A DNA stretch of 63,800 nucleotides, the filler included, from Octopus bimaculoides (Eukaryota), in assembly GCF_001194135.2 (NCBI RefSeq). It is 5 parts of 5 records of this genome, joined end to end, with 100 filler letters (N's around TTAATTAATTAA, not from the genome) between each part and the next. Parts side by side here need not be neighbours in the genome. Positions count along the whole stretch, not along the records: positions 1 to 24,473 come from NC_069006.1; 4 more parts are not named here. The stretch is one strand, 5' to 3'. Below, piece after piece: positions 36 to 24,473 of this stretch. Both the position numbers and the translations under genes were made by a program. The number at the start of each line of letters is the position of its first letter. Within the stretch, counting starts at the first letter, position 1. Below the pieces are notes generated by a model. That model was not told the DNA's origin, searched no databases, and saw only the letters and a program-made list of their open reading frames with translations.

Positions 36-90
<55 letters not shown>

Positions 91-446
91 CACACACATA
101 TGTACGACGGGCTTCTTTCAGTTTTCGTCTACCAAATCCACTCACAAGGCTTTGGTTGGCCCAATGCTATAGTAGAAGACACATGCCCAAGGTGCCACGG
201 AATGGGACTGAACCCGGAACCATGTAGTTGGTAAGCAAGCTACTTACCACACAGCCACTCCTGTATACCATCCATTATGTAATGTGTGTTATGCAATGTA
301 TGCAGTGCAACAAATGTTAGGCAGTGTACATGTTATGCAAGAAACATGTTATACGATGTATGATATGCAATGCGTGTTATGTAATATATACTATGCAATG
401 TGTGTTATGTAATATATACTATGTGATGTGTGTTATGTAATATATA

Positions 447-6239: not shown

Positions 6240-6765
6240 CGTGTTCTTGTGTGACTTGAGGGAGATTTAACGGCTATTTCTGGTAAGTCGAGTGATTACA
6301 TAATGGCTCTCTAGAATCACGTGCGTGTGCGTGTGTGTATGTTGCCGCAACGTGTGTTCTTGTGTGACATGAGGAAGATTTAGCTGCTACTTCTGGTAAG
6401 TCGAGTGACCACATAATGGCTTTCTTTAACTACAGTTAGTGTGTGTGTGTGTGTGTTGCTCCATGTTGTCTTTACATGTGCATAACACGAAGTTTAACTG
6501 CTATTTCTAGCAAGTCGAGTGACCATATAGCGGCTCTCACATTACCACATTGTTGTTGTTCTATGTTGCCTTGACGAATGTAGGTTATTGCATGATTTGA
6601 AGAAGATTTAGCTGCTATTTCTAGTAAATCAAGTGACCATGGAGTGGTTCTCTCGTTACCACGTCGTGTGTGTTGGTCTATGTTGTCTTGGCAGATGTGG
6701 GTTTTTGCATGGTATGAGGGACATTTAGCTGCTATTTCTGGTAAGTCGAGAGATCACATCCTATT
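6240..6765 (+). repeat. Degenerate tandem array, five units of about 114 bp
   Basis: Core gagatttagctgctatttctggtaagtcgagtgacc recurs, with the gtaagt-equivalent position at 6283, 6396, 6510, 6624 and 6741. Confidence 0.85.
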
Positions 6766-8060: not shown

Positions 8061-9299
8061 CTACACACACACACACACACACACACACTTACGCATGCAT
8101 CCCCCCACCCAAGAGAAATGAGAGAATAATTTCCACACATGGAAAACAAGCAGTTCCAATTTCATGAGCACTTCCATCTCCATAGTCTAGCAGTTCAGCA
8201 AAAAAGATTGATAGAATGAATACCAGGCTTAGAAAGGCAAGAAAATAAATACTGGNNNNNNNNNNNNNNNNNNNNNNNNNNNNNNNNNNNNNNNNNNNNN
8301 NNNNNNNNNNNNNNNNNNNNNNNNNNNNNNNNNNNNNNNNNNNNNNNNNNNNNNNNNNNNNNNNNNNNNNNNNNNNNNNNNNNNNNNNNNNNNNNNNNNN
8401 NNNNNNNNNNNNNNNNNNNNNNNNNNNNNNNNNNNNNNNNNNNNNNNNNNNNNNNNNNNNNNNNNNNNNNNNNNNNNNNNNNNNNNNNNNNNNNNNNNNN
8501 NNNNNNNNNNNNNNNNNNNNNNNNNNNNNNNNNNNNNNNNNNNNNNNNNNNNNNNNNNNNNNNNNNNNNNNNNNNNNNNNNNNNNNNNNNNNNNNNNNNN
8601 NNNNNNNNNNNNNNNNNNNNNNNNNNNNNNNNNNNNNNNNNNNNNNNNNNNNNNNNNNNNNNNNNNNNNNNNNNNNNNNNNNNNNNNNNNNNNNNNNNNN
8701 NNNNNNNNNNNNNNNNNNNNNNNNNNNNNNNNNNNNNNNNNNNNNNNNNNNNNNNNNNNNNNNNNNNNNNNNNNNNNNNNNNNNNNNNNNNNNNNNNNNN
8801 NNNNNNNNNNNNNNNNNNNNNNNNNNNNNNNNNNNNNNNNNNNNNNNNNNNNNNNNNNNNNNNNNNNNNNNNNNNNNNNNNNNNNNNNNNNNNNNNNNNN
8901 NNNNNNNNNNNNNNNNNNNNNNNNNNNNNNNNNNNNNNNNNNNNNNNNNNNNNNNNNNNNNNNNNNNNNNNNNNNNNNNNNNNNNNNNNNNNNNNNNNNN
9001 NNNNNNNNNNNNNNNNNNNNNNNNNNNNNNNNNNNNNNNNNNNNNNNNNNNNNCTTCTTTCAGTTTCTTTCTACCATATCCACTCACAAGGCTTTGGTCA
9101 CTCAATGCTGTAGCAGAAGACCCTTGTCCAAGGTGCCACACAGTGGGGCAGAACCTGGAATCATGTGGTTGGGAAGCAAGCCTCTTATCACAGAGCCATG
9201 CCTGTACCTATATATATATATATATATATATAATGTTGCATAATGCGCAAATAAAAATCACATGCATTTGTAAATGTGCATGTTTTAGAATCATGCATT

Positions 9300-9750
9300 C
9301 ACATGTATATACCCCTTCTCACACAAACATGTATACACCCCTTCTCACACATACATGTATACACCCTCTCTCACACATACACATACCCTCTCACACATGT
9401 ATACACACCCTCTCTCACATGTATACACACCCTTTCACACATACATGTATGCACCCCTTCTCACATGTATACACACCGTCTGACACATGTATACACACCC
9501 TCTCTCACATGTATACACACCCTTTCACACATACATGTATACACCCCTTCTCACATGTATACACACCGTCTCACACATGTATACACACCCTCTCACACAT
9601 GTATACACACCCTCTCTCACATGTATACACACCCTGTCACACATGTATACACTCCCTCTCACACATGTATACACACCCTCTCACATGTATACACACCCTC
9701 TCATACATACATGTATACACACCATTTCACACATATGTACACACATCCAC
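9300..9750. repeat. Minisatellite (about 20-24 bp, catgtatacacaccctctcaca)
   Basis: Directly visible tandem units; they produce the spurious HT/YT ORFs. Confidence 0.9.
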
Positions 9751-10848: not shown

Positions 10849-13800
10849 GTTTCAAATTTTGGCACAAGGCCAGCAATTTTAGGGGAGGGGGTAAGTCAAC
10901 TACATTGATCCCAGGGTTTCACTGGAACTTGGTTTATCGACCCTGAAAGGATAACAGACAAAGTGGACCTCGGCAGAGTTTGAACACAGAACATTAAAGA
11001 CATACAAAACACCGCTAAGCATTTTGCCCAGCATGCTACCAAATCTACCAGTTCACCACCATAGTAATAACAATGATTTCTTTTAATGGATACAAGGGTC
11101 CAAGGCATTGAAAACAATACGAAAAGGACGAAGCAACAATGAATAATAAATAAAAGTGAATCATTTTTTTATTCACACTTGCTTCTCATCCTTGGGAACC
11201 TTGCCATCTGGCACACACAACAAAGGAGAATAGCTCGCTCTATCTTCCTTGTAGTCTTTTCGTGTTTTTCTAATGTTTATGATTTGTTTTTCTTTAGTGT
11301 TTTGTTTCAGTTGCTTGCTTTCTTATGTCTGAGTTGCTGATGCTCTGGATTCTTTTTCTCATCAAAATGGTGACAATGCACTTCAATGTTCATGGTGCCA
11401 TGTATAAAGCACCCGCGCTGGTGTCACATGGAAAGCATGCTTGCTGGCTTTAATTAAAAGAGCATGTGTGTCGGCACCATGTAAAAAGCTCCCCCAGCTC
11501 GTGTCACGTAAAAAGCACTCATGCTGGCACTAAGTAAAACGCACTCAATACACTTTGTGAAGCGGTTGGCATTAGGAAGGGCATCCCACCATAGAGGCCA
11601 TACCGAAACAGTCAATTGGAGCCTGGTACAGCTCTCTGGTTTTTCCACCGCCTGTCAAACCATCCAATCCTCCATGCCATCATGGAAAACGGACATTAAA
11701 TGATGATGATGATGGTGATGTATCTAGCTGTGATGACAACCGTGTAGAGATCCAATCCAATTACTAACTCTGAGAACCCTTCTCTGATTCCTCTGTCAGT
11801 TCTTTTCTTTTGTTGTTGTTGCCTTAATTTTTTTCCATCACCATATTTCTGCTGTTTCTCATTATTAAGCTAATATTCAGAACAGATTAACATGTAATTT
11901 GGATGGAAGGTTTTAGTTTCGATCACTTTAATCCTTCTGTTGCCATATTTCTGTTGAAAATACACCGACTTTGTTCATGTTAATTTTGAAAATAATGAAT
12001 AACTTAGTAGAATAACTTCATTATTAATAAGCTGGTATTTGGATTGTAAATCGACTTGGAATTTTGATGGAAGATTTTAATTTAGATCTAAGATAGGAAG
12101 TTTGTATCCTATAACTAGGGGTGGTCCCCAGCAGGTTAGTATCAAAAGTGTTAATCTCTGTTGGAAAATAACTTTGTCATTATTAAGCTGCTGTTTGAAG
12201 TATAAATTAACATGAGATTCTAATGGGAGTTCTTAAAGTAGTTTACTTAAACCCTTTTGTAACTATATTTCTGTAGAAATCCACTGCCTTTGTTTCAATT
12301 AATTTTTAAAATAACAAAGAATTCAGTAAAATAACATCCTTAGTAGTAAAGCTGGTATTCTGAACATAAATTAACTTGGAATTTTGGCAGAAGATTTTAA
12401 TTTAGATCCCTCTGAGATAGGAAGTTTGTATCTTAGAACTAGGGTAGGTCCCCAGCAGGTTAGTATCAAAAGTGTTAACCTCTGTTGGAAAATAATTTTG
12501 TCATCATTAAGCTTGTGTTTGAAATATAAATTAACATGAAATTACTTTCAAACAGGAAGCTTGCATCATAGACCCCAACATGGCCTTAGGTGTGTTGGGC
12601 TCAAAGGGGTTAAAATAGGGAGTTTGTATACTAAATCCAAGGATGGTCTCAGTTAGGTCAGTATGAATAAGGTTAGGAGAATCCTCCTTAGGTTTTTATG
12701 GCTTGCTCTTTTCCATTCTATTTCTGGGGTAGAAGTTAAAGGCTGAAACACTTGCCTGAGGATGGGTGGGGTTCAGCTCTCTCAAGAATCTCTTACCACT
12801 ATCTCAGGGACTGGTAAATCATTTAAAGCTGGAATACTACTTCATTGAAGTAAACTTTACTGTTGGGCAAGCCCATATTTCAGGAGGAGGTGAGGGGAAA
12901 TTATTTACTCCATAACTGGTGGGTACATAACATTAGTTAGGTCAGGCTGCTTTTCAGAAGTGGGGTTCGAGGACACCAAGCCTCTATCTTGAGCTTGCAT
13001 GCGTTCATTGAGAGACAGAGGTTATAAAGTATAATTACAGATAATTAGTTAACTAATCTGTGCTCTGAAGTTGATGACTGATGCCGGCAGGCAAGATGGC
13101 TGTACTTGCATGGGCATGTAATATTAATGGATATTATTGTAAAGCGGTGAACTGGCAGAAGTGTTAGCACACTGGCAAATATACATAGCAGTGTTTCATC
13201 CGTTTTTATGTTCTGAGATCAAATTCCCCTGAAGTCGACTTTGCCTTTCTTTCATTTGGGGTTGGTAAAATAAAAACCAGTTGAACACCATTTTGATCCC
13301 TTGCTGAAATTGTTTGCTTTGTGCCAAAATTTGAAACCAATATTAATGGATGGTATATTGCGCGAGTCAGTAGAGTCATTCTCATGCTGAGCAAAATGCT
13401 TAGCAGCACTTTATCCATCTTTATGTTCTGAGTTCATCTACCGTTTCACAAACATTGTTTTCCATTCCTCAGGTCCTCCCCAAACCATCCAACTCACCAA
13501 CAAAGCTTGGTGGTGTTGCCACTTTAGTTGCTGATAGCTTGAAAATGCAACAGGTTGTACTGGGTTGCAATAGCAGCATACATATACGTACATATACATA
13601 TCACTGAATAGCGATGAAAGGACTTTGACTAACAACCAACCAATTGATTGTTTAACCAGCTCATTAAACAATCGATCGATTGGTTAGTTGGTTAGATATT
13701 TAGCAGCAAAGAAGTGATAGTGAAGCAGTGCATGCATTTATTATTATTGGCATAATAACCCTCCCCAAAACACAAGAAGATATATACATGGATATTAGTT

Positions 13801-14419
13801 CTCTAGCTTGTATTTGACTTCTGTTGAAGCCAGTATATTGCAGTCTAATTTATTATGCTATGACAATGTAATGCAGTGATTATGATGTAGTTTAATTATG
13901 CTATGATTGTGGCTCTAGTCATATATATATATATGAGTTAAGCCTTCATTCCTCCTCTCAAGGCTCTTCTTTTCTCTTTTTTTATTTTATGTATTTTTGT
14001 TCACTCTGATGAAGCTCCAAGTTCCACATCGGATGTGTTACAAAATATGAATATTATTCTCAGAGTTTTTTTGGCAACACTGTGGGACATTGGAAGTAGA
14101 AACGGCTGTTAGATGGGATAAAGTTTTGTATTAAAAAATAATAATTGATGGTAGTCAATTGCTGTTAATCAAGATTTCTCCATTTAATTCATATATATAT
14201 ATATATATATATATCTCCTCATTTAATGTCCATTGTCTATGCTGGAATGGGTTGGATGGTTTGACCGGGCTGGCACGGTGGAAGACTGCACCAGACTCGA
14301 GTCTGATTTGGAATAGTTTTCTATGAGGCCCAATACTTGAGAGGAACTCAGCCATTTTGCCCCTGTGAGGCCCAATGTTTGAAAGGAATTCAGCCAGTTT
14401 GCCTATATATATATATATA

Positions 14420-14803
14420 CTTTAACTCGTTTCAGTCATTTTGACTGTGGCCATGCTGGAGCATCACCTTTAGTCAAGCAAATCCACCCCAGGACTTATT
14501 CTTTGTAACCCTATTACTTATTCTATTGGTCTCTTTTGCCAAACTGCTAGGTTATGGGGACGTAAACACACTACCATCAGTTGTCAAGTGATGTTGGGGG
14601 GACAAGCATAAGCACACATACACTTATATATACATATATACAATGGGCTTCTTTCAGTTTCCTCTACTAAATCCATTCAATAGGCTTTGGTCGGCCCGAG
14701 GCTATAGTAGAAGACACTTGCCCAAGTTGCCATGCAGTGGGAATGAACCCGGAACCATGTGGTTAGTAAGCAAGGTACTTACCACACAGCCACTCCTGTG
14801 CCT
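14420..14803 (-). mobile_element. SINE family A, full length
   Basis: Reverse complement of the 50534-50957 structure. Confidence 0.85.
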
Positions 14804-15237
14804 CAAAAGACACCCGTTGTTAATGTCCTGTTATTTGTATTTGTGTACCATTTCTCCGTTTTTTTCTGTCCTTGTTTTCGTATACATTCGCTGCTTTCTT
14901 CCAAGGAATCTAGTGCTCGTAGCTTAGTTTTTCCTTGGGGCTGGTCAGATTGGAGCAATCTCGAGTATAACCAGCCGAAATTGTAAAGATAATCTGGAAC
15001 TCGACTGAGGAAAGAAAACTCCGAATGATGTGTCCTTATTTTCTTTGTATTGTCTGTCTGGATGTTTTGTTGTCCCTTTTTTGTATCACCTAACTGTCTG
15101 GATGTTTTGAGTTCTTGTCCCATTTTTGTATTTTATATATATATATATGATTGTTGTTGTTTAATGAATTATGCTAATGATGTTCAATATCTTAAGAATA
15201 TTTATTATCTCTTGGCTTTTTCTTTGTTTGTTTGCAG

Positions 15238-15308
15238 ACTTCTCAAACTTCCATTATGCTTCAGGAACCAGATGATGACTCAATTCGTATGAAAGTTGGT
15301 TTCAGTGG
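15238..15308 (+). CDS. aPKC: Atypical protein kinase C (PRKCI/PRKCZ orthologue), first visible coding exon, start of the PB1 domain; probable start codon at 15256
   Basis: Pyrimidine-rich acceptor tttgtttgtttgcag|15238 and donor GG|gtgagt at 15309. Translates TSQTSI-MLQEPDDDSIRMKVGFSG. RMKVGFSG aligns with the aPKC PB1 beta-strand motif (human RVKAYYRG) including the conserved Lys. The split codon GG+G joins in frame to the exon at 23776. Confidence 0.85.
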
Positions 15309-15505
15309 GTGAGTCCATCTTTATCACCTCCCTCCCCACCTCCCTTCCTCTCATTCTCTTTTTCTTTCTTCCTTATAGCTTCCTTTCATCTTTCTCTCCT
15401 ATCTTCTATCTTTCTTATCATTTTCCATCTTCTCTTTCTGTCCATCTTTTCCCTTTTATTCCCCCCACCCCTGCCGTATTCTTTTTTTATATTTCTCTTT
15501 TATGC

Positions 15506-15860
15506 TTTTATTCTTTTACTCGTTTCAGTCATTTGGCTGTGGCCATACTGGAGCACCACCTTTAGTACTTATTCTATCGGTCTCTTTTGCCGAACCGCCA
15601 CGTTACAGAGATATAAACACACCAATATCAGTTGTCTAGCAATGGTGGTGGTGGTGGTGGGGGGGGCAAACACAGACACACAAATACATATATATACATG
15701 ATGGGCTTCTTTCAGTTTCCATCTATCAAATCCACTCACAAGACTTTGGTCGGCCTGAGGCTACAGTAGAAGACACTTGCCCAAGGTGCCACGCAGTGGG
15801 ACTGAACCCGGAACCATATGGTTGGGAAGCAAGTGACTTATACCACACAGCTACTTCTGC
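15506..15860 (-). mobile_element. SINE family A, full length
   Basis: Same head, body and tail on the minus strand. Confidence 0.85.
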
Positions 15861-16732
15861 AGAATTTTTTATATTTCTTTATCATTTCACCTCCTCCCCC
15901 TCCACTCCTTATAACCTTTCATCCTTTCTCTTTTCTATTTTTCTACAATGTTCATGAAGCCTTCATTGTTTTCCTTACTTCTTTCTTTCCTCTTCTCCCC
16001 TCTCTTTCTCTCTCCCCCTCTCCTATATTCATTCATTCACCTTTCTCTCTTCCATTCTCTTTCCTTTTCCTTCTCTCTCCCCCCCCTCTTCCTCTTTTCA
16101 CTTTATATTCTCTTTCCATTCTCTCTCTTTCTCTACTTTTCTCTCTTCCTTTTCTTCTCTTTCTCATTCTTTTGCTTCACTTAAATTAATCTCCTCCCAC
16201 CGACCCCCCACCCACACATTTCACCCTTGTCTGACCCTTCCTTCTCTACCACAAAACNNNNNNNNNNNNNNNNNNNNNNNNNNNNNNNNNNNNNNNNNNN
16301 NNNNNNNNNNNNNNNNNNNNNNNNNNNNNNNNNNNNNNNNNNNNNNNNNNNNNNNNNNNNNNNNNNNNNNNNNNNNNNNNNNNNNNNNNNNNNNNNNNNN
16401 NNNNNNNNNNNNNNNNNNNNNNNNNNNNNNNNNNNNNNNNNNNNNNNNNNNNNNNNNNNNNNNNNNNNNNNNNNNNNNNNNNNNNNNNNNNNNNNNNNNN
16501 NNNNNNNNNNNNNNNNNNNNNNNNNNNNNNNNNNNNNNNNNNNNNNNNNNNNNNNNNNNNNNNNNNNNNNNNNNNNNNNNNNNNNNNNNNNNNNNNNNNN
16601 NNNNNNNNNNNNNNNNNNNNNNNNNNNNNNNNNNNNNNNNNNNNNNNNNNNNNNNNNNNNNNNNNNNNNNNNNNNNNNNNNNNNNNNNNNNNNNNNNNNN
16701 NNNNNNNNNNNNNNNNNNNNNNNNNNNNNNNA

Positions 16733-17063
16733 AGGCGCATGGCTCAGTGGTTAGAGCGTCCAGCTTATGATCGTGAGGTTGTGAGTTTGAAACCTGGACT
16801 GGGCTACATGTTGTGTTCTTGAGCAAGACACTTTATTTCTCGTTGCTCCAGTTCACTCAGCTCTAGAAATGAGTTGCGACATCACTGGTACCAAGCGTAT
16901 CAACCTTTGCCTTTCCCTTGGATAACATCAGTGGCGTGGAGAGGGGAGGCCGGTATGCATGGCTGACTGCTGGTCTTCCATACACAACCTTGCCCAGACT
17001 TGTGCCTCAGAGGGTAACTTTCTAGGTGCAATCCCATGGTCAGTCATAACTGAAGGGGGTCTC
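16733..17063 (+). mobile_element. tRNA-derived SINE family D
   Basis: A box tggctcagtgg, B box gagtttgaaac, CORE-like gttcttgagcaagacacttt, then a unique body. Confidence 0.75.
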
Positions 17064-17774
17064 AGCAATATATATATAAGGCGCAGGAGTGGCTGTGTGG
17101 TAAGTAGCTTGCTTACCAACCACATGGTTCTGGGTTCAGTCCCACTGCGTGGCACCTTGGGCAAGTGTCTTCTACTATAGCCTCGGGNNNNNNNNNNNNN
17201 NNNNNNNNNNNNNNNNNNNNNNNNNNNNNNNNNNNNNNNNNNNNNNNNNNNNNNNNNNNNNNNNNNNNNNNNNNNNNNNNNNNNNNNNNNNNNNNNNNNN
17301 NNNNNNNNNNNNNNNNNNNNNNNNNNNNNNNNNNNNNNNNNNNNNNNNNNNNNNNNNNNNNNNNNNNNNNNNNNNNNNNNNNNNNNNNNNNNNNNNNNNN
17401 NNNNNNNNNNNNNNNNNNNNNNNNNNNNNNNNNNNNNNNNNNNNNNNNNNNNNNNNNNNNNNNNNNNNNNNNNNNNNNNNNNNNNNNNNNNNNNNNNNNN
17501 NNNNNNNNNNNNNNNNNNNNNNNNNNNNNNNNNNNNNNNNNNNNNNNNNNNNNNNNNNNNNNNNNNNNNNNNNNNNNNNNNNNNNNNNNNNNNNNNNNNN
17601 NNNNNNNNNNNNNNNNNNNNNNNNNNNNNNNNNNNNNNNNNNNNNNNNNNNNNNNNNNNNNNNNNNNNNNNNNNNNNNNCTTTAGAGAGACTTAGAAATA
17701 TTAATAACTCTATTTCTGAAAACCAGTGGATAGATTCCACTGAAATTAGAACAGACAGTCAGTAGCGCCGCCTG

Positions 17775-17849
17775 GCTGGAGCTTGGCTGCTCTGCATTGA
17801 CAAGGGGCAACACCCTGAAACTAGTCTAGTCTGCAGATGCCAAACCAGC
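17775..17849 (+). ncRNA. Type I hammerhead ribozyme, U3-A8 core variant, in the aPKC intron and sense to the pre-mRNA
   Basis: Stem I tctgca(17791-96)/tgcaga(17832-37), extended by ttggc/gccaa and gctgg/ccagc. Core UUGACAA at 17797-803. Stem II gggg-caaca-ccct. GAAA at 17817-20. Palindromic stem III actag-t-ctagt. GUC cleavage triplet ending at 17831. Confidence 0.8.
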
Positions 17850-18026
17850 AAGGGGAAGCTGCTGACCTCCCCTGTTCGAAGGTTATAAAGGACACAGGTT
17901 TCGTGTGTCACATAGCTAGCTAGAGGCGATGGCTTCTTGGAGCTAATTCACGGCAGCTTTCGTCCTAATTTTGGGACTGCCATGTTGGCTTGGCGATAAC
18001 TATTATATATATATATAGATATATAT

Positions 18027-18396
18027 GCACAAGTGTGGCTGTGTGGTAAGACGATTGCTTCCCAACCACATGGTTCTCGGTTCAGTCCTCCTGCATGGTA
18101 CATTGGGCCAACCAAAGCCTTATGAGTGGATTTGGTAGATGGAAACTGAAAGAAGCCCACCTCTCACACACAAACACACACACATATGTGTGTGTCTGTG
18201 CTAGTCTGCTACAGCTGCTTCACAACCGGTGTTGGTGTATTTACATCCCCATAATTCAGCAGTTCTGCAAAAGAAACTGATAGAATAAGTACCAAGTTTT
18301 ACAAAAAGAAAAAGTGCTGGGGTTTCTTTCTTCAACTAGAATTCTTCAAGGTGGTGCCCCAGCATGGCCGCAGTCTAATGACTGAACCAAGTAAAG
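18027..18396 (+). mobile_element. SINE family A, full length
   Basis: Same head, internal CA/TG tract, body and tail. Confidence 0.8.
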
Positions 18397-18536
18397 AAGA
18401 AATATGTATGTATCTATCTATCGGTCTATCTATCTATCTATCTATCTATCTGCATGTGTGTGTGTATATGTGTGTATATATGTGTGCGTATGTATGTATG
18501 AGTGTACGTGTGTGTATATATATGTACATATATGTG

Positions 18537-18580
<44 letters not shown>

Positions 18581-18755
18581 GATGCAGATGTAGCTGTGTG
18601 GTAAGAAACTTGCTTCCCAATCACATTGTTCCAGGTTCCGTCACACTCTTTGGTATCTTGTGCAAATGTCTTCTACTATAGCCTCAGGCTGTTTCACAAG
18701 TTATTATTTTAAATCGTTTCTCAACATAATTGCCCCATCCTCCCCTCTCTCTCCC

Positions 18756-18796
<41 letters not shown>

Positions 18797-19860
18797 TTTA
18801 GTTCACACTGTAAAGTGACTGGCATTCGGAAGGGCATCCAGCTGTACAAAAGAACCTTGTCAAAACTGACCTTACCTGTGCCACTTAGAAAGCACCAAGT
18901 CCACTTTGATGGGTGGGTGGTTAGTGTTAGGAAGGGCATCCAACTGTAAAAATCCTGCCAAATTAGTCACAGAATTCCTGTCAAAATCTCCCACCCATGC
19001 TGACATGGAAGGCGGGTATCAAACAATGATGGTGATTATCTATCTATCTATATCATCATCATCATCATCGTTTAACGTCCGCTTTCNNNNNNNNNNNNNN
19101 NNNNNNNNNNNNNNNNNNNNNNNNNNNNNNNNNNNNNNNNNNNNNNNNNNNNNNNNNNNNNNNNNNNNNNNNNNNNNNNNNNNNNNNNNNNNNNNNNNNN
19201 NNNNNNNNNNNNNNNNNNNNNNNNNNNNNNNNNNNNNNNNNNNNNNNNNNNNNNNNNNNNNNNNNNNNNNNNNNNNNNNNNNNNNNNNNNNNNNNNNNNN
19301 NNNNNNNNNNNNNNNNNNNNNNNNNNNNNNNNNNNNNNNNNNNNNNNNNNNNNNNNNNNNNNNNNNNNNNNNNNNNNNNNNNNNNNNNAGGTGCAAAATG
19401 GTTGAATGTAGATTTGTCCTTTAATCTGGAGGCTTCCAGAAAAGATTTCTAATGTTGATTCTTCATATTTTGCTGATGGTTCACAGCCGTAAATTTGCGA
19501 AGATATGAAAGTAATACTTGTAATATGATGTGTGGTGGTGAATTTGTGGAAAGAAGTCCAATAAAACTCATCAATTTAGTTAAAAATGGAGAAGACAAGT
19601 GGTTAAAATATATAAGGGAATTTTAATTTTAATTCATGCAGATGATCGTTTCGTACCGAGATACAAAAATAATGCAAATTCATGATTGAATTGAATTAGA
19701 TTAAATTAATTTAATTATATATATTATTGTACTCTTCAGTGCAGGAAGCATAAACAAAATTTACAATGAACTTGAGGAAGGATACAGCAGAATAGAATTT
19801 AGGAGATTCATATTTTTATCTTGTGAGAAAGAGATGTGAGTCAAGTTAGATATTAACTAT

Positions 19861-19913
<53 letters not shown>

Positions 19914-19994
19914 CACATACATACATACATACACACATACACATAAATATATATATACATACATACATACACACACACACACATATATATACAT

Positions 19995-20030
<36 letters not shown>

Positions 20031-21793
20031 CAAAACAAACAACTAAAAAAGGGTGAAAATATACAATAGGATTAGAAATAGTTTAGAAAAATTAAAAGAA
20101 AACATAGATGTCGTATTTCAATTAAATATTAAAAATTTTTTTAACGTCACAGCCCATATATCTATATACGTGTATAATAGTGTCTGTATATTTGTATACA
20201 TATGGATATATATATGTATGTATATGTGTATGTGCATATGAGTATATGCATGTGTGTGTCGCGGGGGGGAGGTATATATGTATGTGTATATATGTTTACC
20301 TTATCCGCCAATCTTGTTTCCACCCCCATCCAGCTTCCAGNNNNNNNNNNNNNNNNNNNNNNNNNNNNNNNNNNNNNNNNNNNNNNNNNNNNNNNNNNNN
20401 NNNNNNNNNNNNNNNNNNNNNNNNNNNNNNNNNNNNNNNNNNNNNNNNNNNNNNNNNNNNNNNNNNNNNNNNNNNNNNNNNNNNNNNNNNNNNNNNNNNN
20501 NNNNNNNNNNNNNNNNNNNNNNNNNNNNNNNNNNNNNNNNNNNNNNNNNNNNNNNNNNNNNNNNNNNNNNNNNNNNNNNNNNNNNNNNNNNNNNNNNNNN
20601 NNNNNNNNNNNNNNNNNNNNNNNNNNNNNNNNNNNNNNNNNNNNNNNNNNNNNNNNNNNNNNNNNNNNNNNNNNNNNNNNNNNNNNNNNNNNNNNNNNNN
20701 NNNNNNNNNNNNNNNNNNNNNNNNNNNNNNNNNNNNNNNNNNNNNNNNNNNNNNNNNNNNNNNNNNNNNNNNNNNNNNNNNNNNNNNNNNNNNNNNNNNN
20801 NNNNNNNNNNNNNNNNNNNNNNNNNNNNNNNNNNNNNNNNNNNNNNNNNNNNNNNNNNNNNNNNNNNNNNNNNNNNNNNNNNNNNNNNNNNNNNNNNNNN
20901 NNNNNNNNNNNNNNNNNNNNNNNNNNNNNNNNNNNNNNNNNNNNNNNNNNNNNNNNNNNNNNNNNNNNNNNNNNNNNNNNNNNNNNNNNNNNNNNNNNNN
21001 NNNNNNNNNNNNNNNNNNNNNNNNNNNNNNNNNNNNNNNNNNNNNNNNNNNNNNNNNNNNNNNNNNNNNNNNNNNNNNNNNNNNNNNNNNNNNNNNNNNN
21101 NNNNNNNNNNNNNNNNNNNNNNNNNNNNNNNNNNNNNNNNNNNNNNNNNNNNNNNNNNNNNNNNNNNNNNNNNNNNNNNNNNNNNNNNNNNNNNNNNNNN
21201 NNNNNNNNNNNNNNNNNNNNNNNNNNNNNNNNNNNNNNNNNNNNNNNNNNNNNNNNNNNNNNNNNNNNNNNNNNNNNNNNNNNNNNNNNNNNNNNNNNNN
21301 NNNNNNNNNNNNNNNNNNNNNNNNNNNNNNNNNNNNNNNATATATATATAGTACAAATAATATGTGAGTATATGCATATATACGTACATGTATGTACATA
21401 CCTACGTCTACACGTATAAATAGATGCATTTCTGGGTACAGGACGTCACAAAAAAACGTGGACAAAATGAGAAACAGAACATAAACAGAGCACAGAAAAC
21501 ACACAGGCCACATAGAGAACATTTCCTTCATCAGCTGCCATGTTTATATGTATATATACTTTATTAAAGTTGTGAAAACATCACAACGATATGACAAAAG
21601 CTGCTACTCAGAGTTTTCATGTCTCTGTTTGCTGGACAGTTGTGATTGGGAATGGGGCAATAATTAAGTTTATATGTATAAATATATTTACACATATAAT
21701 AAAACATATTTACTCTACCTCCGGTATTTGAGTACTATTTTTTCCCACTTTGTTTCACATTTATGTACTTAATCTGGTATATATACATATATA

Positions 21794-21960
21794 TCATCAT
21801 AGTCGTTTAACGTCTGCTTTCCGTGCTAGCATGGATTGGATGATTTGACTGAGGACTGGTGAAACCAGATGGCTACACCAGGCTCCAATCTGATTTGGCA
21901 GAGTTTCTACAGCTGGATGCCCTTCCTAACACCAACCGCTCAGAGAGTGTAGTGGGTGCT
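21794..21960 (-). mobile_element. RTE 3' UTR copy, apparently young
   Basis: Reverse complement is about 90% identical (by eye) to 24690-24850. Confidence 0.85.
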
Positions 21961-22030
21961 ATATATATATATATATGTTTACATTTGTGACCTTCATTTT
22001 CAACTGTCACATGATGTCAAGACAAGGGTA

Positions 22031-22076
<46 letters not shown>

Positions 22077-22351
22077 CACACATAAATGTTTGTCTTTATG
22101 TGGTGTTATGACAAAAACAGTTTCACGTTAAACTGAAGAATCGGTCAATAGTCTATTAGTAGATGATACATTTGGTATAAGACGATTTACTCTATTTATT
22201 ATACTTTGGCAAGAAGAGGGATGATGACTGGGACTTCGAAGTTTCAACCTGCTAACTTTCTTCATTCATCAGACTGTGTGTGTATGTATATGTGTACATG
22301 TATGTATATATACGTGTATGTGTGTGTATATATGTGTATGTGTGTGAAGGA

Positions 22352-22383
<32 letters not shown>

Positions 22384-23404
22384 TCATATAGGTATGTATG
22401 TATGTACATATATGTGTATGTATGTATATATATATATTCTTTTATTTTTTTTTACTTGTTTGTCATTTGACTCTGGTCATGCTGGGGCACCGCCTTTAGT
22501 TGAGCAAATCAACCCCAGGACTTATCCTTTGTAAGCCTAGTATTTATTCTATTGTTTTTTTTGCCGAACCGCTAAGTATTCGAGTACTATTTTTCCCACC
22601 TTGTTTCACATTTATGTGCTCTCTTTCTCTCTCTAATATATATATATATATATANNNNNNNNNNNNNNNNNNNNNNNNNNNNNNNNNNNNNNNNNNNNNN
22701 NNNNNNNNNNNNNNNNNNNNNNNNNNNNNNNNNNNNNNNNNNNNNNNNNNNNNNNNNNNNNNNNNNNNNNNNNNNNNNNNNNNNNNNNNNNNNNNNNNNN
22801 NNNNNNNNNNNNNNNNNNNNNNNNNNNNNNNNNNNNNNNNNNNNNNNNNNNNNNNNNNNNNNNNNNNNNNNNNNNNNNNNNNNNNNNNNNNNNNNNNNNN
22901 NNNNNNNNNNNNNNNNNNNNNNNNNNNNNNNNNNNNNNNNNNNNNNNNNNNNNNNNNNNNNNNNNNNNNNNNNNNNNNNNNNNNNNNNNNNNNNNNNNNN
23001 NNNNNNNNNNNNNNNNNNNNNNNNNNNNNNNNNNNNNNNNNNNNNNNNNNNNNNNNNNNNNNNNNNNNNNNNNNNNNNNNNNNNNNNNNNNNNNNNNNNN
23101 NNNNNNNNNNNNNNNNNNNNNNNNNNNNNNNNNNNNNNNNNNNNNNNNNNNNNNNNNNNNNNNNNNNNNNNNNNNNNNNGGTCGATGCCAGGCTCCTCTG
23201 CTGGTGATACATAAGAAAAGCACCCACTACACTCTTGGAGTGGTTGGTGTTAGGCAGGGCATCCAGCTGTAGGAACATTGCCAGATCAGACTGAAGCCTG
23301 GTGCAGCCTCTTGGTTTCTCAGACCCCCAGTTGAACTGTCCAACCCATGCCAACATGCAAAACGGACGTTAAACAACGATGATGATGATGATGACACACA
23401 CATG

Positions 23405-23615
23405 TACTTCATCCCATGTCTCCCCAGGTCTCCCGCATCCACGTTTTGCGTCTAGTAGTGGAGGAGGATACACAGAGGGTGTGATAGTTAGAATAAGAAA
23501 AAGATGGAAAAAATTCAAAGAGCTGATACCTTTGTTGGCCATGAAAGGCTTCTCTCTCTCTCTCTGAGTGAAAGGAAGATTGTATGATGCATGTATTCTC
23601 ACAAAGCCATCTCCT
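23405..23615. mobile_element. Rearranged RTE ORF2 fragments
   Basis: Minus strand CGRPGETWDEV (about 23405-23447) is joined to plus strand SSGGGYTEGVIVRIRKRWKKFKELIPLLAMKGFSL..KGRLYDAC (about 23452-23600). Confidence 0.7.
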
Positions 23616-23775
23616 TCAACACTACTCCTACTACTACTACTCCTTTTAGTTGTGGGGGTCTTTGTCTTGTGAAGGTCTTGGTTACCTCACTAGTGTTGGT
23701 GCCACATGAAAAGCACACAGGACACTGTATATTTTCATTTATTTCATTTTCATGCTTGTTTTCTATTTGTTACAG

Positions 23776-23897
23776 GGACATTCTGGTGACCAGCATCGGC
23801 AGTAAGATCACCTACGAGAGTCTCCGTAAAGAAATCAGAGATATATGTAAATTTGAGTCTAAACAACCCTTTACAATGAAATGGGTGGATGAGGAAG
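23776..23897 (+). CDS. aPKC: Atypical protein kinase C, PB1 domain exon (122 nt)
   Basis: Acceptor ttttctatttgttacag|23776 and donor G|gtaagg at 23898. Encodes (G)DILVTSIGSKITYESLRKEIRDICKFESKQPFTMKWVDEEG, collinear with aPKC PB1 (human [41 protein letters not shown]), including the OPCA motif WVDEEG. Confidence 0.93.
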
Positions 23898-24473
23898 GTA
23901 AGGGGACCAACTTCTTTTCATTTCATTTTTGTCGTTGATGTTGTTATTTAGCTTTATGCTTCTCTGGATAAACTCTGGTTCATATCTTTTAAGTTTGTTT
24001 TGGGGGAATAGTTTCGCTGTGTTAGTATATGCAGCGAGCTGGCAGAATTGTTAGGATGCTGGGCAAAGCGCTTAGCGGCATTTCATCTGACTTGACATTC
24101 CGAGTTCAAATTCTACCGAGGCCAACTTTGCTTTTCTTCCTTTTGGGCTTGATAAATTAAGTACCAGTTGTGTATTGGGGTCGATGTAATCAACTTAGCC
24201 CCTTCTCTGAAATTGCTGCCCTTGTGGCAAAATTTGAAACCATTATTATTATGATCATCATTAATACTACTACTACGGTAGAAGCTGACGTACTACGACG
24301 AAATACCCAAGATGCAGATAAGATAGAGATTTTTATTTATTTACGGCCTCAAACATCTCAATACCTTGCGCTTTCTTGTTTCTCTCCATGAAATTCAATT
24401 GAATTCAGTTGTTGTCTTAAATTCATGCTTATTCATTTTCTAAGCTTCCTAAATTCATGCTACGTTATATTCT

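What the first reader, a model, noticed from the sequence alone, without database searches (positions are those of the whole stretch)
17775..17849. Complete sense-strand hammerhead ribozyme with a compensatory U3-A8 core inside the aPKC intron
Seen: all three stems and the core are present (stem I tctgca/tgcaga with two further helices, UUGACAA, stem II gggg/ccct, GAAA, stem III actag-t-ctagt, GUC). Both core changes from CUGANGA (C3 to U, G8 to A) fall at the two positions that form the 3-8 Watson-Crick pair of the active fold, so they covary. Established: 3-8 pair swaps are tolerated, and palindromic stem III hammerheads typical of Penelope-like elements can act as dimers. Inference: because it is sense to aPKC pre-mRNA, it could cut the 8.5-kb intron co-transcriptionally after 17831 and modulate splicing of the two PB1 exons. 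This would be analogous to the intronic CPEB3 ribozyme, here in a kinase family linked to polarity and memory.
Basis: partly seen in the sequence, partly recalled or inferred. Interest (0 to 1): 0.8.

Follow-up and report, generated by a model that had tools for sequence, protein, structure and literature searches.

The report
Hammerhead ribozyme motif in octopus intron
A complete self-cleaving "hammerhead" RNA motif of an already known variant type sits in an intron of a protein kinase gene; it is most likely a leftover of a mobile element, and nothing here shows that the gene uses it.

Summary
At 17791-17837 (+) there is a complete type I hammerhead: helix I 6 bp, core UUGACAA, helix II 4 bp with loop CAACA, GAA, palindromic helix III ACUAG-U-CUAGU, GUC, cleavage after 17831. 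It is the only such motif in the window. None appeared in 8000 shuffled windows at equal stem quality, and none in 3 million shuffles of the 35-nt apex.

Helix I continues as a 130-nt rod (17749-17878) inside a 322-nt, single-copy, strongly structured block (z = -4.0). It is sense to aPKC, in the 8468-nt intron between two PB1 exons (Pfam PB1, E = 1e-6).

The U3-A8 core is not new. Natural U3-A8 covariation was reported in 2011, and about 1300 Schistosoma Penelope-like-element hammerheads carry it (2014).

Rfam hammerhead models give no hit even at E <= 10. There is no second copy, no tandem repeat and no reverse-transcriptase ORF in the visible flanks; a 492-N gap lies 111 nt upstream of the motif.

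As a monomer the active fold is disfavoured (helix III probability about 0.1). A dimer gains about 10 kcal/mol.

Most likely this is a solo retrozyme-like or Penelope-derived hammerhead carried as a passenger. Co-option for splicing control is untested, because no cephalopod genomes were reachable.

The parts
17791..17837 (+). Minimal type I hammerhead motif. Helix I is 17791-96/17832-37; core UUGACAA 17797-17803 (U3 = 17797, A8 = 17802); helix II GGGG/CCCU with loop CAACA 17804-17816; G12A13A14 17817-19; helix III 17820-17830; C17 = 17831. Predicted scission lies between 17831 and 17832.
17749..17878 (+). 130-nt rod: helix I continued through internal loops (loop 1 is UGC on the 5' side and U on the 3' side), with the hammerhead at its tip. 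The hammerhead-constrained fold has 43 pairs, 41 Watson-Crick and 2 G-U.
17680..18001 (+). Single-copy, non-coding, strongly structured block that carries the hammerhead (MFE -117.4 kcal/mol, z = -4.04; GC 47.5% against 39% for the intron). Its 5' limit is unknown because of the gap. Its 3' limit is the (TA)n plus SINE that starts at about 18002.
17188..17679 (.). Assembly gap (492 N), 111 nt upstream of the motif. It hides the 5' part of the element, and any upstream tandem copy. About 290 nt of it should be the rest of the SINE copy that begins at 17068.
15239..15308 (+). aPKC exon with the start codon (ATG at 15256; MLQEPDDDSIRMKVGFSG), donor GG|gtgagt.
23777..23899 (+). aPKC PB1 exon (DILVTSIGSKITYESLRKEIRDICKFESKQPFTMKWVDEEG), acceptor ttacag|G, donor G|gtaagg.
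18002..18412 (+). Flanking (TA)n followed by a full-length copy of the abundant SINE-like repeat. This is not part of the ribozyme element; it marks the element's 3' boundary.

Best explanation
This is a genuine hammerhead-derived sequence: a canonical metazoan type I hammerhead with the known U3-A8 core variant. It sits at the tip of a long helix-I rod in a roughly 320-nt non-coding structured RNA module. Most likely it is a solo copy (a monomer or fragment) of a non-autonomous retroelement that depends on Penelope-like elements, of the non-LTR retrozyme / Sm-alpha kind. It landed in sense orientation in the first coding intron of aPKC and is carried there as a passenger.

In the life cycle of such elements, multimeric transcripts fold two neighbouring ribozymes into a double hammerhead through the palindromic helix III. 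Each ribozyme cuts after C17, releasing unit-length RNA with a 5'-OH and a 2',3'-cyclic phosphate. That RNA is circularised, then copied and integrated by a Penelope reverse transcriptase/endonuclease.

In its present context (one visible copy inside a pre-mRNA) self-cleavage would be slow or absent and without demonstrated consequence for aPKC.

Shown here: motif, coordinates, statistics, strand, intron, dimer-compatible fold, lack of an ORF and lack of other copies in the window. Inferred: transposon origin, family assignment, activity level.
For: All core and helix requirements are met except for the covarying 3-8 pair and a G-U at 10.1-11.1. The match is far beyond chance.

The architecture is a 6-bp helix I followed by internal loop 1 and a closing stem, a 4-bp helix II, and a short palindromic helix III. 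That matches the description of canonical metazoan type I hammerheads, which work as dimers in tandem repeats (PMC4209133, PMC7229834).

The dimer MFE is the double hammerhead, with an 11-bp intermolecular helix III and a gain of about 10 kcal/mol.

The 322-nt block is unusually structured (z = -4.04), as reported for retrozyme RNAs of roughly 170-400 nt.

Both G-U pairs favour the + strand, and the + strand rod folds 3.4 kcal/mol better than the - strand rod.

The U3-A8 core is already documented in about 1300 Schistosoma PLE hammerheads and in other natural examples (PMC4209133, PMC3088659). Octopus genomes carry many Penelope elements (PMC13282606). A squid genome has 235 Rfam Hammerhead_1 hits (PMC6962438).

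The surroundings are a mosaic of SINE insertions. The + strand frames next to the motif hold no protein domain.
Against: No second copy of the block exists in the window, and no tandem arrangement is visible. No RT or GIY-YIG remnant is visible either, so the transposon origin is inferred from analogy and literature only.

Rfam hammerhead models do not report the motif even at E <= 10 on a 57-nt query.

The near-perfect pairing (41 of 43 pairs Watson-Crick) would also fit a sequence under selection in place. Retrozymes are reported as depleted from introns in Xenopus (2026 preprint), so an intronic sense copy is not the typical location.

Copy number in the genome could not be measured. The collections at hand hold no cephalopod genome.
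Confidence: 0.6

Rival explanations
1. Domesticated intronic ribozyme. The hammerhead is kept by selection in the aPKC intron and cleaves the nascent pre-mRNA after 17831. This would tune production of the PB1-containing isoform, as proposed for the amniote intronic hammerheads HH9/HH10 and shown for the HDV-like CPEB3 ribozyme.
For: The motif is in sense orientation inside the intron. It is intact, with 41 of 43 pairs Watson-Crick, among decayed SINEs. The block is single-copy in the window. There is precedent for intronic type I hammerheads derived from retroelements (PMC6155905) and for an intronic ribozyme that affects expression and memory (PMC10919898).
Against: No conservation data could be obtained. 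The monomer active fold is a minority state (helix III probability about 0.1; competing pairing 0.57). The U3-A8 core and the G10.1-U11.1 wobble are expected to slow catalysis, and PLE-type hammerheads show low activity in vitro (PMC4209133). About 35 bp of helix I would hold the two cleavage products together. Slow hammerhead cleavage of an intron does not impair splicing (PMC2995048).
Confidence: 0.08
2. Solo pseudo-LTR of an autonomous Penelope-like element. The hammerhead would belong to a pLTR whose RT/GIY-YIG ORF was truncated at insertion or lies in the assembly gap, and would not be a retrozyme-type non-autonomous unit.
For: All known canonical PLEs carry hammerheads in their pLTRs, and most genomic copies are solo motifs from truncated PLEs (PMC4209133). 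Penelope elements are abundant in Octopus (PMC13282606). A gap lies directly upstream. A (TA)n tract abuts the element.
Against: Metazoan PLE hammerheads are typically minimal: helix I of 4-5 bp, helix II of 6-8 bp, an extra nucleotide after A9, and little or no helix III. This motif has the canonical 6/4 architecture with a 4-5-bp helix III. No RT or endonuclease domain is seen in the + frames of the flanks. About 290 of the 492 gap positions are accounted for by a SINE.
Confidence: 0.2
3. Chance look-alike. The sequence is an ordinary inverted repeat or hairpin whose apex happens to resemble a hammerhead. It would have no ancestry in ribozymes and no activity.
For: Rfam models give no hit. 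The - strand folds almost as well as the + strand (-55.8 against -59.2), as for any inverted repeat. Two consensus core positions are changed. The z-score of the 96-nt fold is only -1.45.
Against: 0 of 3,000,000 apex shuffles and 0 of 8000 window shuffles reproduce the motif. The two core changes are exactly the known covarying pair. Helix lengths and the palindromic helix III match the canonical metazoan type without having been required by the search.
Confidence: 0.03

Closest known systems
Canonical metazoan type I hammerheads of non-LTR retrozymes and SINE-like elements (newt satellite 2, Schistosoma Sm-alpha, coral, mussel and axolotl retrozymes)
   Same: Type I topology. 6-bp helix I followed by internal loop 1 and a closing stem. 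4-bp helix II. Short palindromic helix III that permits a double hammerhead. Embedded in a compact, structured, non-coding unit of about 300 nt.
   Different: Only one copy is visible and there is no tandem array. The core is U3-A8 instead of C3-G8, and 10.1-11.1 is G-U. Helix III is longer (4-5 bp) than the 1-2 bp described. The helix I rod is unusually long. Rfam Hammerhead_1 does not score it.
Minimal hammerheads of Penelope-like element pLTRs, including the Schistosoma Cercyon U3-A8 family (Cervera & de la Pena 2014)
   Same: The U3-A8 covariation in the core. Palindromic 15.2-16.2 positions. Mostly found as solo, dispersed copies. The host phylum and genus carry many PLEs.
   Different: Minimal hammerheads have a 4-5-bp helix I, a 6-8-bp helix II, an unpaired nucleotide between A9 and 10.1, and little or no helix III. 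None of these applies here, and no PLE ORF is nearby.
Intronic hammerheads of amniotes (HH9 in RECK, HH10 in CTCL/C10orf118, DTNB)
   Same: A type I hammerhead in sense orientation inside an intron of a protein-coding gene, thought to derive from retroelement hammerheads.
   Different: Those are defined by deep positional and sequence conservation and have canonical C3-G8 cores that Rfam detects. Conservation could not be tested for this locus.
CPEB3 intronic ribozyme (HDV-like)
   Different: It is a different ribozyme class (nested double pseudoknot). It is conserved across mammals, and its activity and its effect on expression have been shown experimentally. None of that is shown here.

Membership tests
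Hammerhead ribozyme, type I | Conserved core: C3 U4 G5 A6 N7 G8 A9 ... G12 A13 A14 ... A15.1-U16.1, H17 | tested here: met
   U4, G5, A6, A9, G12, A13, A14, A15.1-U16.1 and C17 are present. Positions 3 and 8 are U and A, the documented covarying alternative to C-G (PMC3088659, PMC4209133).
Hammerhead ribozyme, type I | Three helices around the core, with helix I open-ended | tested here: met
   Helix I is 6 bp and continues to about 35 bp. Helix II is 4 bp, with G10.1-U11.1 instead of G-C. Helix III is 4 bp with a 3-nt loop, or 5+5 bp in a dimer.
Hammerhead ribozyme, type I | Score above the Rfam gathering threshold for a hammerhead covariance model (RF00163 and relatives) | tested here: not met
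   No hammerhead family was reported at the gathering threshold, nor at E <= 10 on 300-nt and 57-nt queries.
Hammerhead ribozyme, type I | Loop 1 / loop 2 tertiary contact | tested here: inconclusive
   An internal loop (UGC / U) lies right after the 6-bp helix I, and loop 2 is CAACA. From memory this resembles the Schistosoma UAC bulge and CAAAUA loop, but no alignment or 3D test was possible.
Hammerhead ribozyme, type I | Mg2+-dependent self-cleavage 3' of position 17 | not testable with these tools
   Only thermodynamic prediction is available. The active monomer fold lies 3.4 kcal/mol above the MFE, and the dimer is favoured by about 10 kcal/mol.
Non-LTR retrozyme | Head-to-tail tandem repeats of about 170-400 bp, each with a type I hammerhead | tested here: not met
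   The block is single-copy in the window, with no internal or neighbouring repeat of it. An upstream copy inside the 492-N gap cannot be excluded.
Non-LTR retrozyme | Non-coding unit that folds into a compact, highly paired RNA | tested here: met
   The 322 nt fold at -117.4 kcal/mol, z = -4.04. There are no Pfam domains.
Penelope-like element pLTR hammerhead | Lies in a direct repeat flanking an RT plus GIY-YIG ORF | tested here: not met
   There is no RT or GIY-YIG signal in the + frames of 16732-17187 and 17680-19086. SINEs abut the block. The gap limits this test.
Penelope-like element pLTR hammerhead | Minimal architecture: short helix I, long helix II, extra nucleotide after A9, helix III absent or tiny | tested here: not met
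   The observed stems are 6/4/5 bp with no extra nucleotide.
Domesticated intronic ribozyme (HH9/HH10-like) | Sense orientation within an intron of a conserved gene | tested here: met
   The motif is on the + strand, inside intron 15309-23776 between two PB1 exons.
Domesticated intronic ribozyme (HH9/HH10-like) | Positional and sequence conservation at the orthologous intron across species | not testable with these tools
   A protein search with the exon peptide returned only one unrelated 54-aa ENA fragment. No cephalopod genome is in the collections.

The most novel reading that the evidence does not exclude
The hammerhead is a single-copy, positionally conserved element of the octopod aPKC gene. 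On this reading a retroelement ribozyme was domesticated independently of the amniote HH9/HH10 cases. Its cleavage of the first coding intron would set how much full-length, PB1-containing aPKC is made in neurons.
Probability: 0.06. Interest if true: 0.7.

Novelty: new member of a known kind. Interest (0 to 1): 0.3.

Why it matters
If it is only a transposon passenger, it adds one more example to the tens of thousands of retroelement hammerheads in invertebrate genomes. It also illustrates that U3-A8 variants escape the Rfam models, so counts based on Rfam (for example 235 in the giant squid) underestimate the true number. It would matter more if the element proved conserved at this intron. 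That would be an invertebrate parallel to the amniote intronic hammerheads, in a polarity and memory kinase, and would give a tractable case for how ribozyme cleavage interacts with splicing.

Tried and rejected
1. Rfam at the gathering threshold on the whole piece, and at E <= 10 on 300-nt and 57-nt queries, gave no hammerhead hit; the only hit was a spurious sucA-II match at E = 0.66.

3. A metagenome scan for the helix III plus core pattern returned 16 loci. None is a relative. Most are chance matches, and L005 and L013/L016 are at best canonical CUGAUGA minimal motifs.

4. A viral-contig scan for core plus helix II plus GAAACUAG found nothing.

5. Pfam on the frames flanking the motif found no RT or GIY-YIG domain. 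Only + frames were tested, and the - strand and the rest of the window were not scanned.

6. An apparent second half-motif upstream (CUGAAAA-stem-GAAAUUAG, 17715-17760) was rejected. Outside CTGAAA-TAG the two stretches share little: 22 of 65 columns are identical overall. Its helix I would be only 2 bp and its 3-8 pair is broken.

7. The 324-bp tandem repeat at 11945-12543, which is retrozyme-sized, has no hammerhead core.

8. A tRNA-like or Pol III origin was checked with ARAGORN, which found nothing. The weak A-box and B-box resemblances I saw by eye were not pursued.

9. I considered that U3, A8 and U11.1 arose by post-insertion decay, since C7pG8 and C11.1pG12 would have been CpG sites. 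With one sequence this can be neither shown nor excluded. The near-perfect pairing of 43 stem positions argues against much decay after insertion, although CpG observed/expected in the rod is low (0.28).

10. Supplementary sequence tables of the key papers are not held. Three primary papers could not be read.

Full report
**What is in the sequence**

The stretch reads UCUGCA-UUGACAA-GGGG-CAACA-CCCU-GAA-ACUAG-U-CUAGU-C-UGCAGA on the + strand. In standard hammerhead numbering:

- Helix I is 17791-17796 paired with 17832-17837.
- The first core box is 17797-17803, with U at position 3 (17797) and A at position 8 (17802).
- Helix II and loop 2 are 17804-17816.
- G12 A13 A14 are 17817-17819.
- Helix III is 17820-17830.

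I wrote an independent descriptor: a core with any Watson-Crick 3-8 pair, three helices, GAAA, and A15.1-U16.1 followed by H17. It finds this site and nothing else on either strand of the piece. A looser scan for core plus helix II plus GAAA also finds no other complete motif.

**Is it more than chance?**

- Dinucleotide-preserving shuffles of the 20,386 non-N bases give 0.016 hits per window at relaxed stem lengths.
- None of 8000 shuffles reaches helices of at least 6, 4 and 4 bp.
- The motif sits on top of a long hairpin, so I also held the arms fixed and shuffled only the 35-nt apex. None of 3,000,000 shuffles gives a hammerhead.

The motif is therefore a real descendant of a hammerhead. 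This holds even though no Rfam hammerhead model reports it at the gathering threshold, or at E <= 10 on queries of 300 and 57 nt. The failure is probably due to the two core substitutions and the long helix III, but I could not test that directly.

It continues through small internal loops to 17749/17878.
- The result is a 130-nt rod with the ribozyme at its tip. It has 43 pairs in the hammerhead-constrained fold, 41 Watson-Crick and 2 G-U.
- Both G-U pairs would be A-C mismatches on the other strand. The + strand rod is 3.4 kcal/mol more stable than the - strand rod.
- The rod lies in a 322-nt block, 17680-18001. The block is single-copy within the window, non-coding and unusually structured (-117.4 kcal/mol, z = -4.04).
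- Its 3' edge is a (TA)n tract and a full-length copy of the SINE-like repeat that litters the window.
- Its 5' edge is lost in a 492-N assembly gap only 111 nt upstream of the motif. About 290 nt of that gap should be the remainder of the SINE copy that starts at 17068.

**Gene context**

- The exon at 23777-23899 matches the PB1 region of human PKC-iota (the query was recalled from memory, the alignment was computed).
- An upstream exon, about 15239-15308, carries the start codon and ends at GG|gtgagt.
- The spliced peptide hits Pfam PB1 at E = 1e-6, above the curated cut-off.
- The intron is 15309-23776, 8468 nt including gaps, and the hammerhead is sense to it.

**Predicted behaviour**

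- As a monomer, the minimum-energy fold pairs G5-A6-C7 with G16.2-U16.1-C17. That extends helix I and destroys the active site.
- The active fold lies 3.4 kcal/mol higher. Helix III has a probability of about 0.1 in the ensemble, against 0.57 for the competing pairing.
- Two copies together fold into exactly the double hammerhead. It has an 11-bp intermolecular helix III with a central U-U and both cores unpaired, at -77.1 kcal/mol against -66.8 for two monomers.

This is the behaviour described for newt, viroid and many metazoan type I hammerheads, which cleave efficiently only when two copies are in one transcript (PMC6155905, PMC4209133). These energy models ignore the tertiary core, so they are indications only.

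**Comparison with what is known**

- The U3-A8 pair is not a new observation. Perreault et al. reported natural covariation of C3-G8 to U3-A8, and noted that such variants had been shown active in vitro (PMC3088659).
- Cervera and de la Pena found about 1300 U3-A8 hammerheads tied to Penelope-like elements in Schistosoma (PMC4209133).
- That paper defines canonical metazoan type I hammerheads as a 6-bp helix I, a 4-bp helix II, and a short helix III with a palindromic loop. That is the architecture here.
- The minimal hammerheads of metazoan Penelope pLTRs have a shorter helix I, a longer helix II, an extra nucleotide after A9, and little or no helix III. None of these applies here.
- Canonical type I hammerheads are the hallmark of non-LTR retrozymes: tandem units of about 170-400 bp expressed as circular RNAs (PMC7229834). 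A recent preprint argues these are non-autonomous derivatives of Penelope pLTRs (bioRxiv 10.64898/2026.07.22.740005).
- Octopus genomes carry many Penelope elements (PMC13282606), and the giant squid genome has 235 Rfam Hammerhead_1 hits (PMC6962438).

My best reading is therefore a solo retrozyme-like or Penelope-derived hammerhead module. The defining tandem arrangement, and any adjacent Penelope ORF, were tested and not found in the visible sequence.

**The functional claim**

Nothing here supports, and some things argue against, regulation of aPKC splicing.

- No copy-number or orthologous-intron evidence could be gathered. The protein database returned only one unrelated 54-aa fragment for the exon peptide. 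The metagenome and viral scans returned no relatives.
- Metazoan Penelope-type minimal hammerheads show low activity in vitro (PMC4209133).
- The monomer fold is unfavourable.
- About 35 bp of helix I would keep the two products together after cleavage.
- Hammerhead cleavage inside an intron left splicing intact in vivo, and only a fast ribozyme aborted it (Dye 2006 and Fong 2009, as summarised in PMC2995048).
- Retrozymes are reported as depleted from introns in Xenopus (2026 preprint). That suggests active sense copies in genes are selected against, not recruited.
- In favour of possible constraint is the near-perfect pairing of the rod among visibly decayed SINE copies. A young insertion explains that equally well.

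**On the covariation**

G8-to-A and C11.1-to-U would both be CpG transitions (C7pG8 and C11.1pG12). CpG observed/expected in the rod is 0.28, against 0.43 for the window. With one sequence I cannot tell whether the U3-A8 pair was inherited from the source family or arose in place. Inheritance is my preferred view, given the published U3-A8 families and the otherwise intact stems.

**Verdict**

The regulatory role is unsupported.

The feature is a new member of a known kind. The closest intronic analogues are the amniote HH9/HH10 hammerheads, not the HDV-like CPEB3 ribozyme (PMC6155905, PMC10919898). Interest is modest unless positional conservation across octopods is shown.

Noticed in passing
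window 17068-17187, 18002-18412, 18557-18689 (+); 14404-14803, 15562-15885, 9054-9234, 63-264 (-): Many copies (65-94% identical) of one SINE-like repeat of about 400 bp, often preceded by (TA)n or (CA)n tracts. They make up much of the intron and the upstream region. Two same-orientation copies bracket the hammerhead block.
   Followed up: partly
window 17715-17760 (+): Just upstream of the hammerhead there is CUGAAAA, then a 5-6-bp stem-loop (CAGUGG/CCACUG), then GAAAUUAG ... GUC. It looks like a degenerate second hammerhead half. Outside the CTGAAA-TAG match the alignment shows little identity, and helix I would be only 2 bp, so it is probably coincidence.
   Followed up: yes
window 11945-12543: A 324-bp tandem repeat (1.9 copies, 83% matches, AT-rich). 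It is retrozyme-sized but has no hammerhead core on either strand.
   Followed up: partly
window 9301-9744: A minisatellite with nested periods of 22, 26 and 90 nt (ACATGTATACACCC...), about 19 copies of the 22-nt unit. It produces the long artefactual 'THTCIHTLSHMYTHP' ORFs.
   Followed up: no
window 6263-6744: Two overlapping tandem arrays with periods of 114-117 nt (about 2.2-2.4 copies each, 76-80% matches). Nature unknown.
   Followed up: no
window 15225-15260: The aPKC exon that holds the ATG (15256) is preceded by a good splice acceptor (tgtttgtttgcag|ACTTC at about 15238). At least one 5'-UTR exon should therefore lie further upstream, and the hammerhead intron is not the first intron of the gene.
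   Followed up: no
L001 4275-4310 (+), metagenome contig Ga0209542_10000290: A canonical-looking hammerhead (CUGAUGA-GUUC-GAAA-GAAC-GAAAC...), with helices of 6/4/2 bp by my descriptor. It turned up by accident in a locus fetched for an unrelated pattern match.
   Followed up: no
L005 about 219-252; L013 and L016 (same sequence): Metagenome contigs with CUGAUGA cores followed by the same ACUAGUCUAGUC helix III as the octopus motif. They are possible minimal hammerheads of unknown eukaryotic or other origin, and are otherwise not similar.
   Followed up: partly
P0001 (ENA, 54 aa, contig of 558 bp): The only database protein similar to the aPKC PB1 exon peptide (72% identity over 66% of the query). 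It is presumably a fragment of animal DNA in a metagenome assembly.
   Followed up: no
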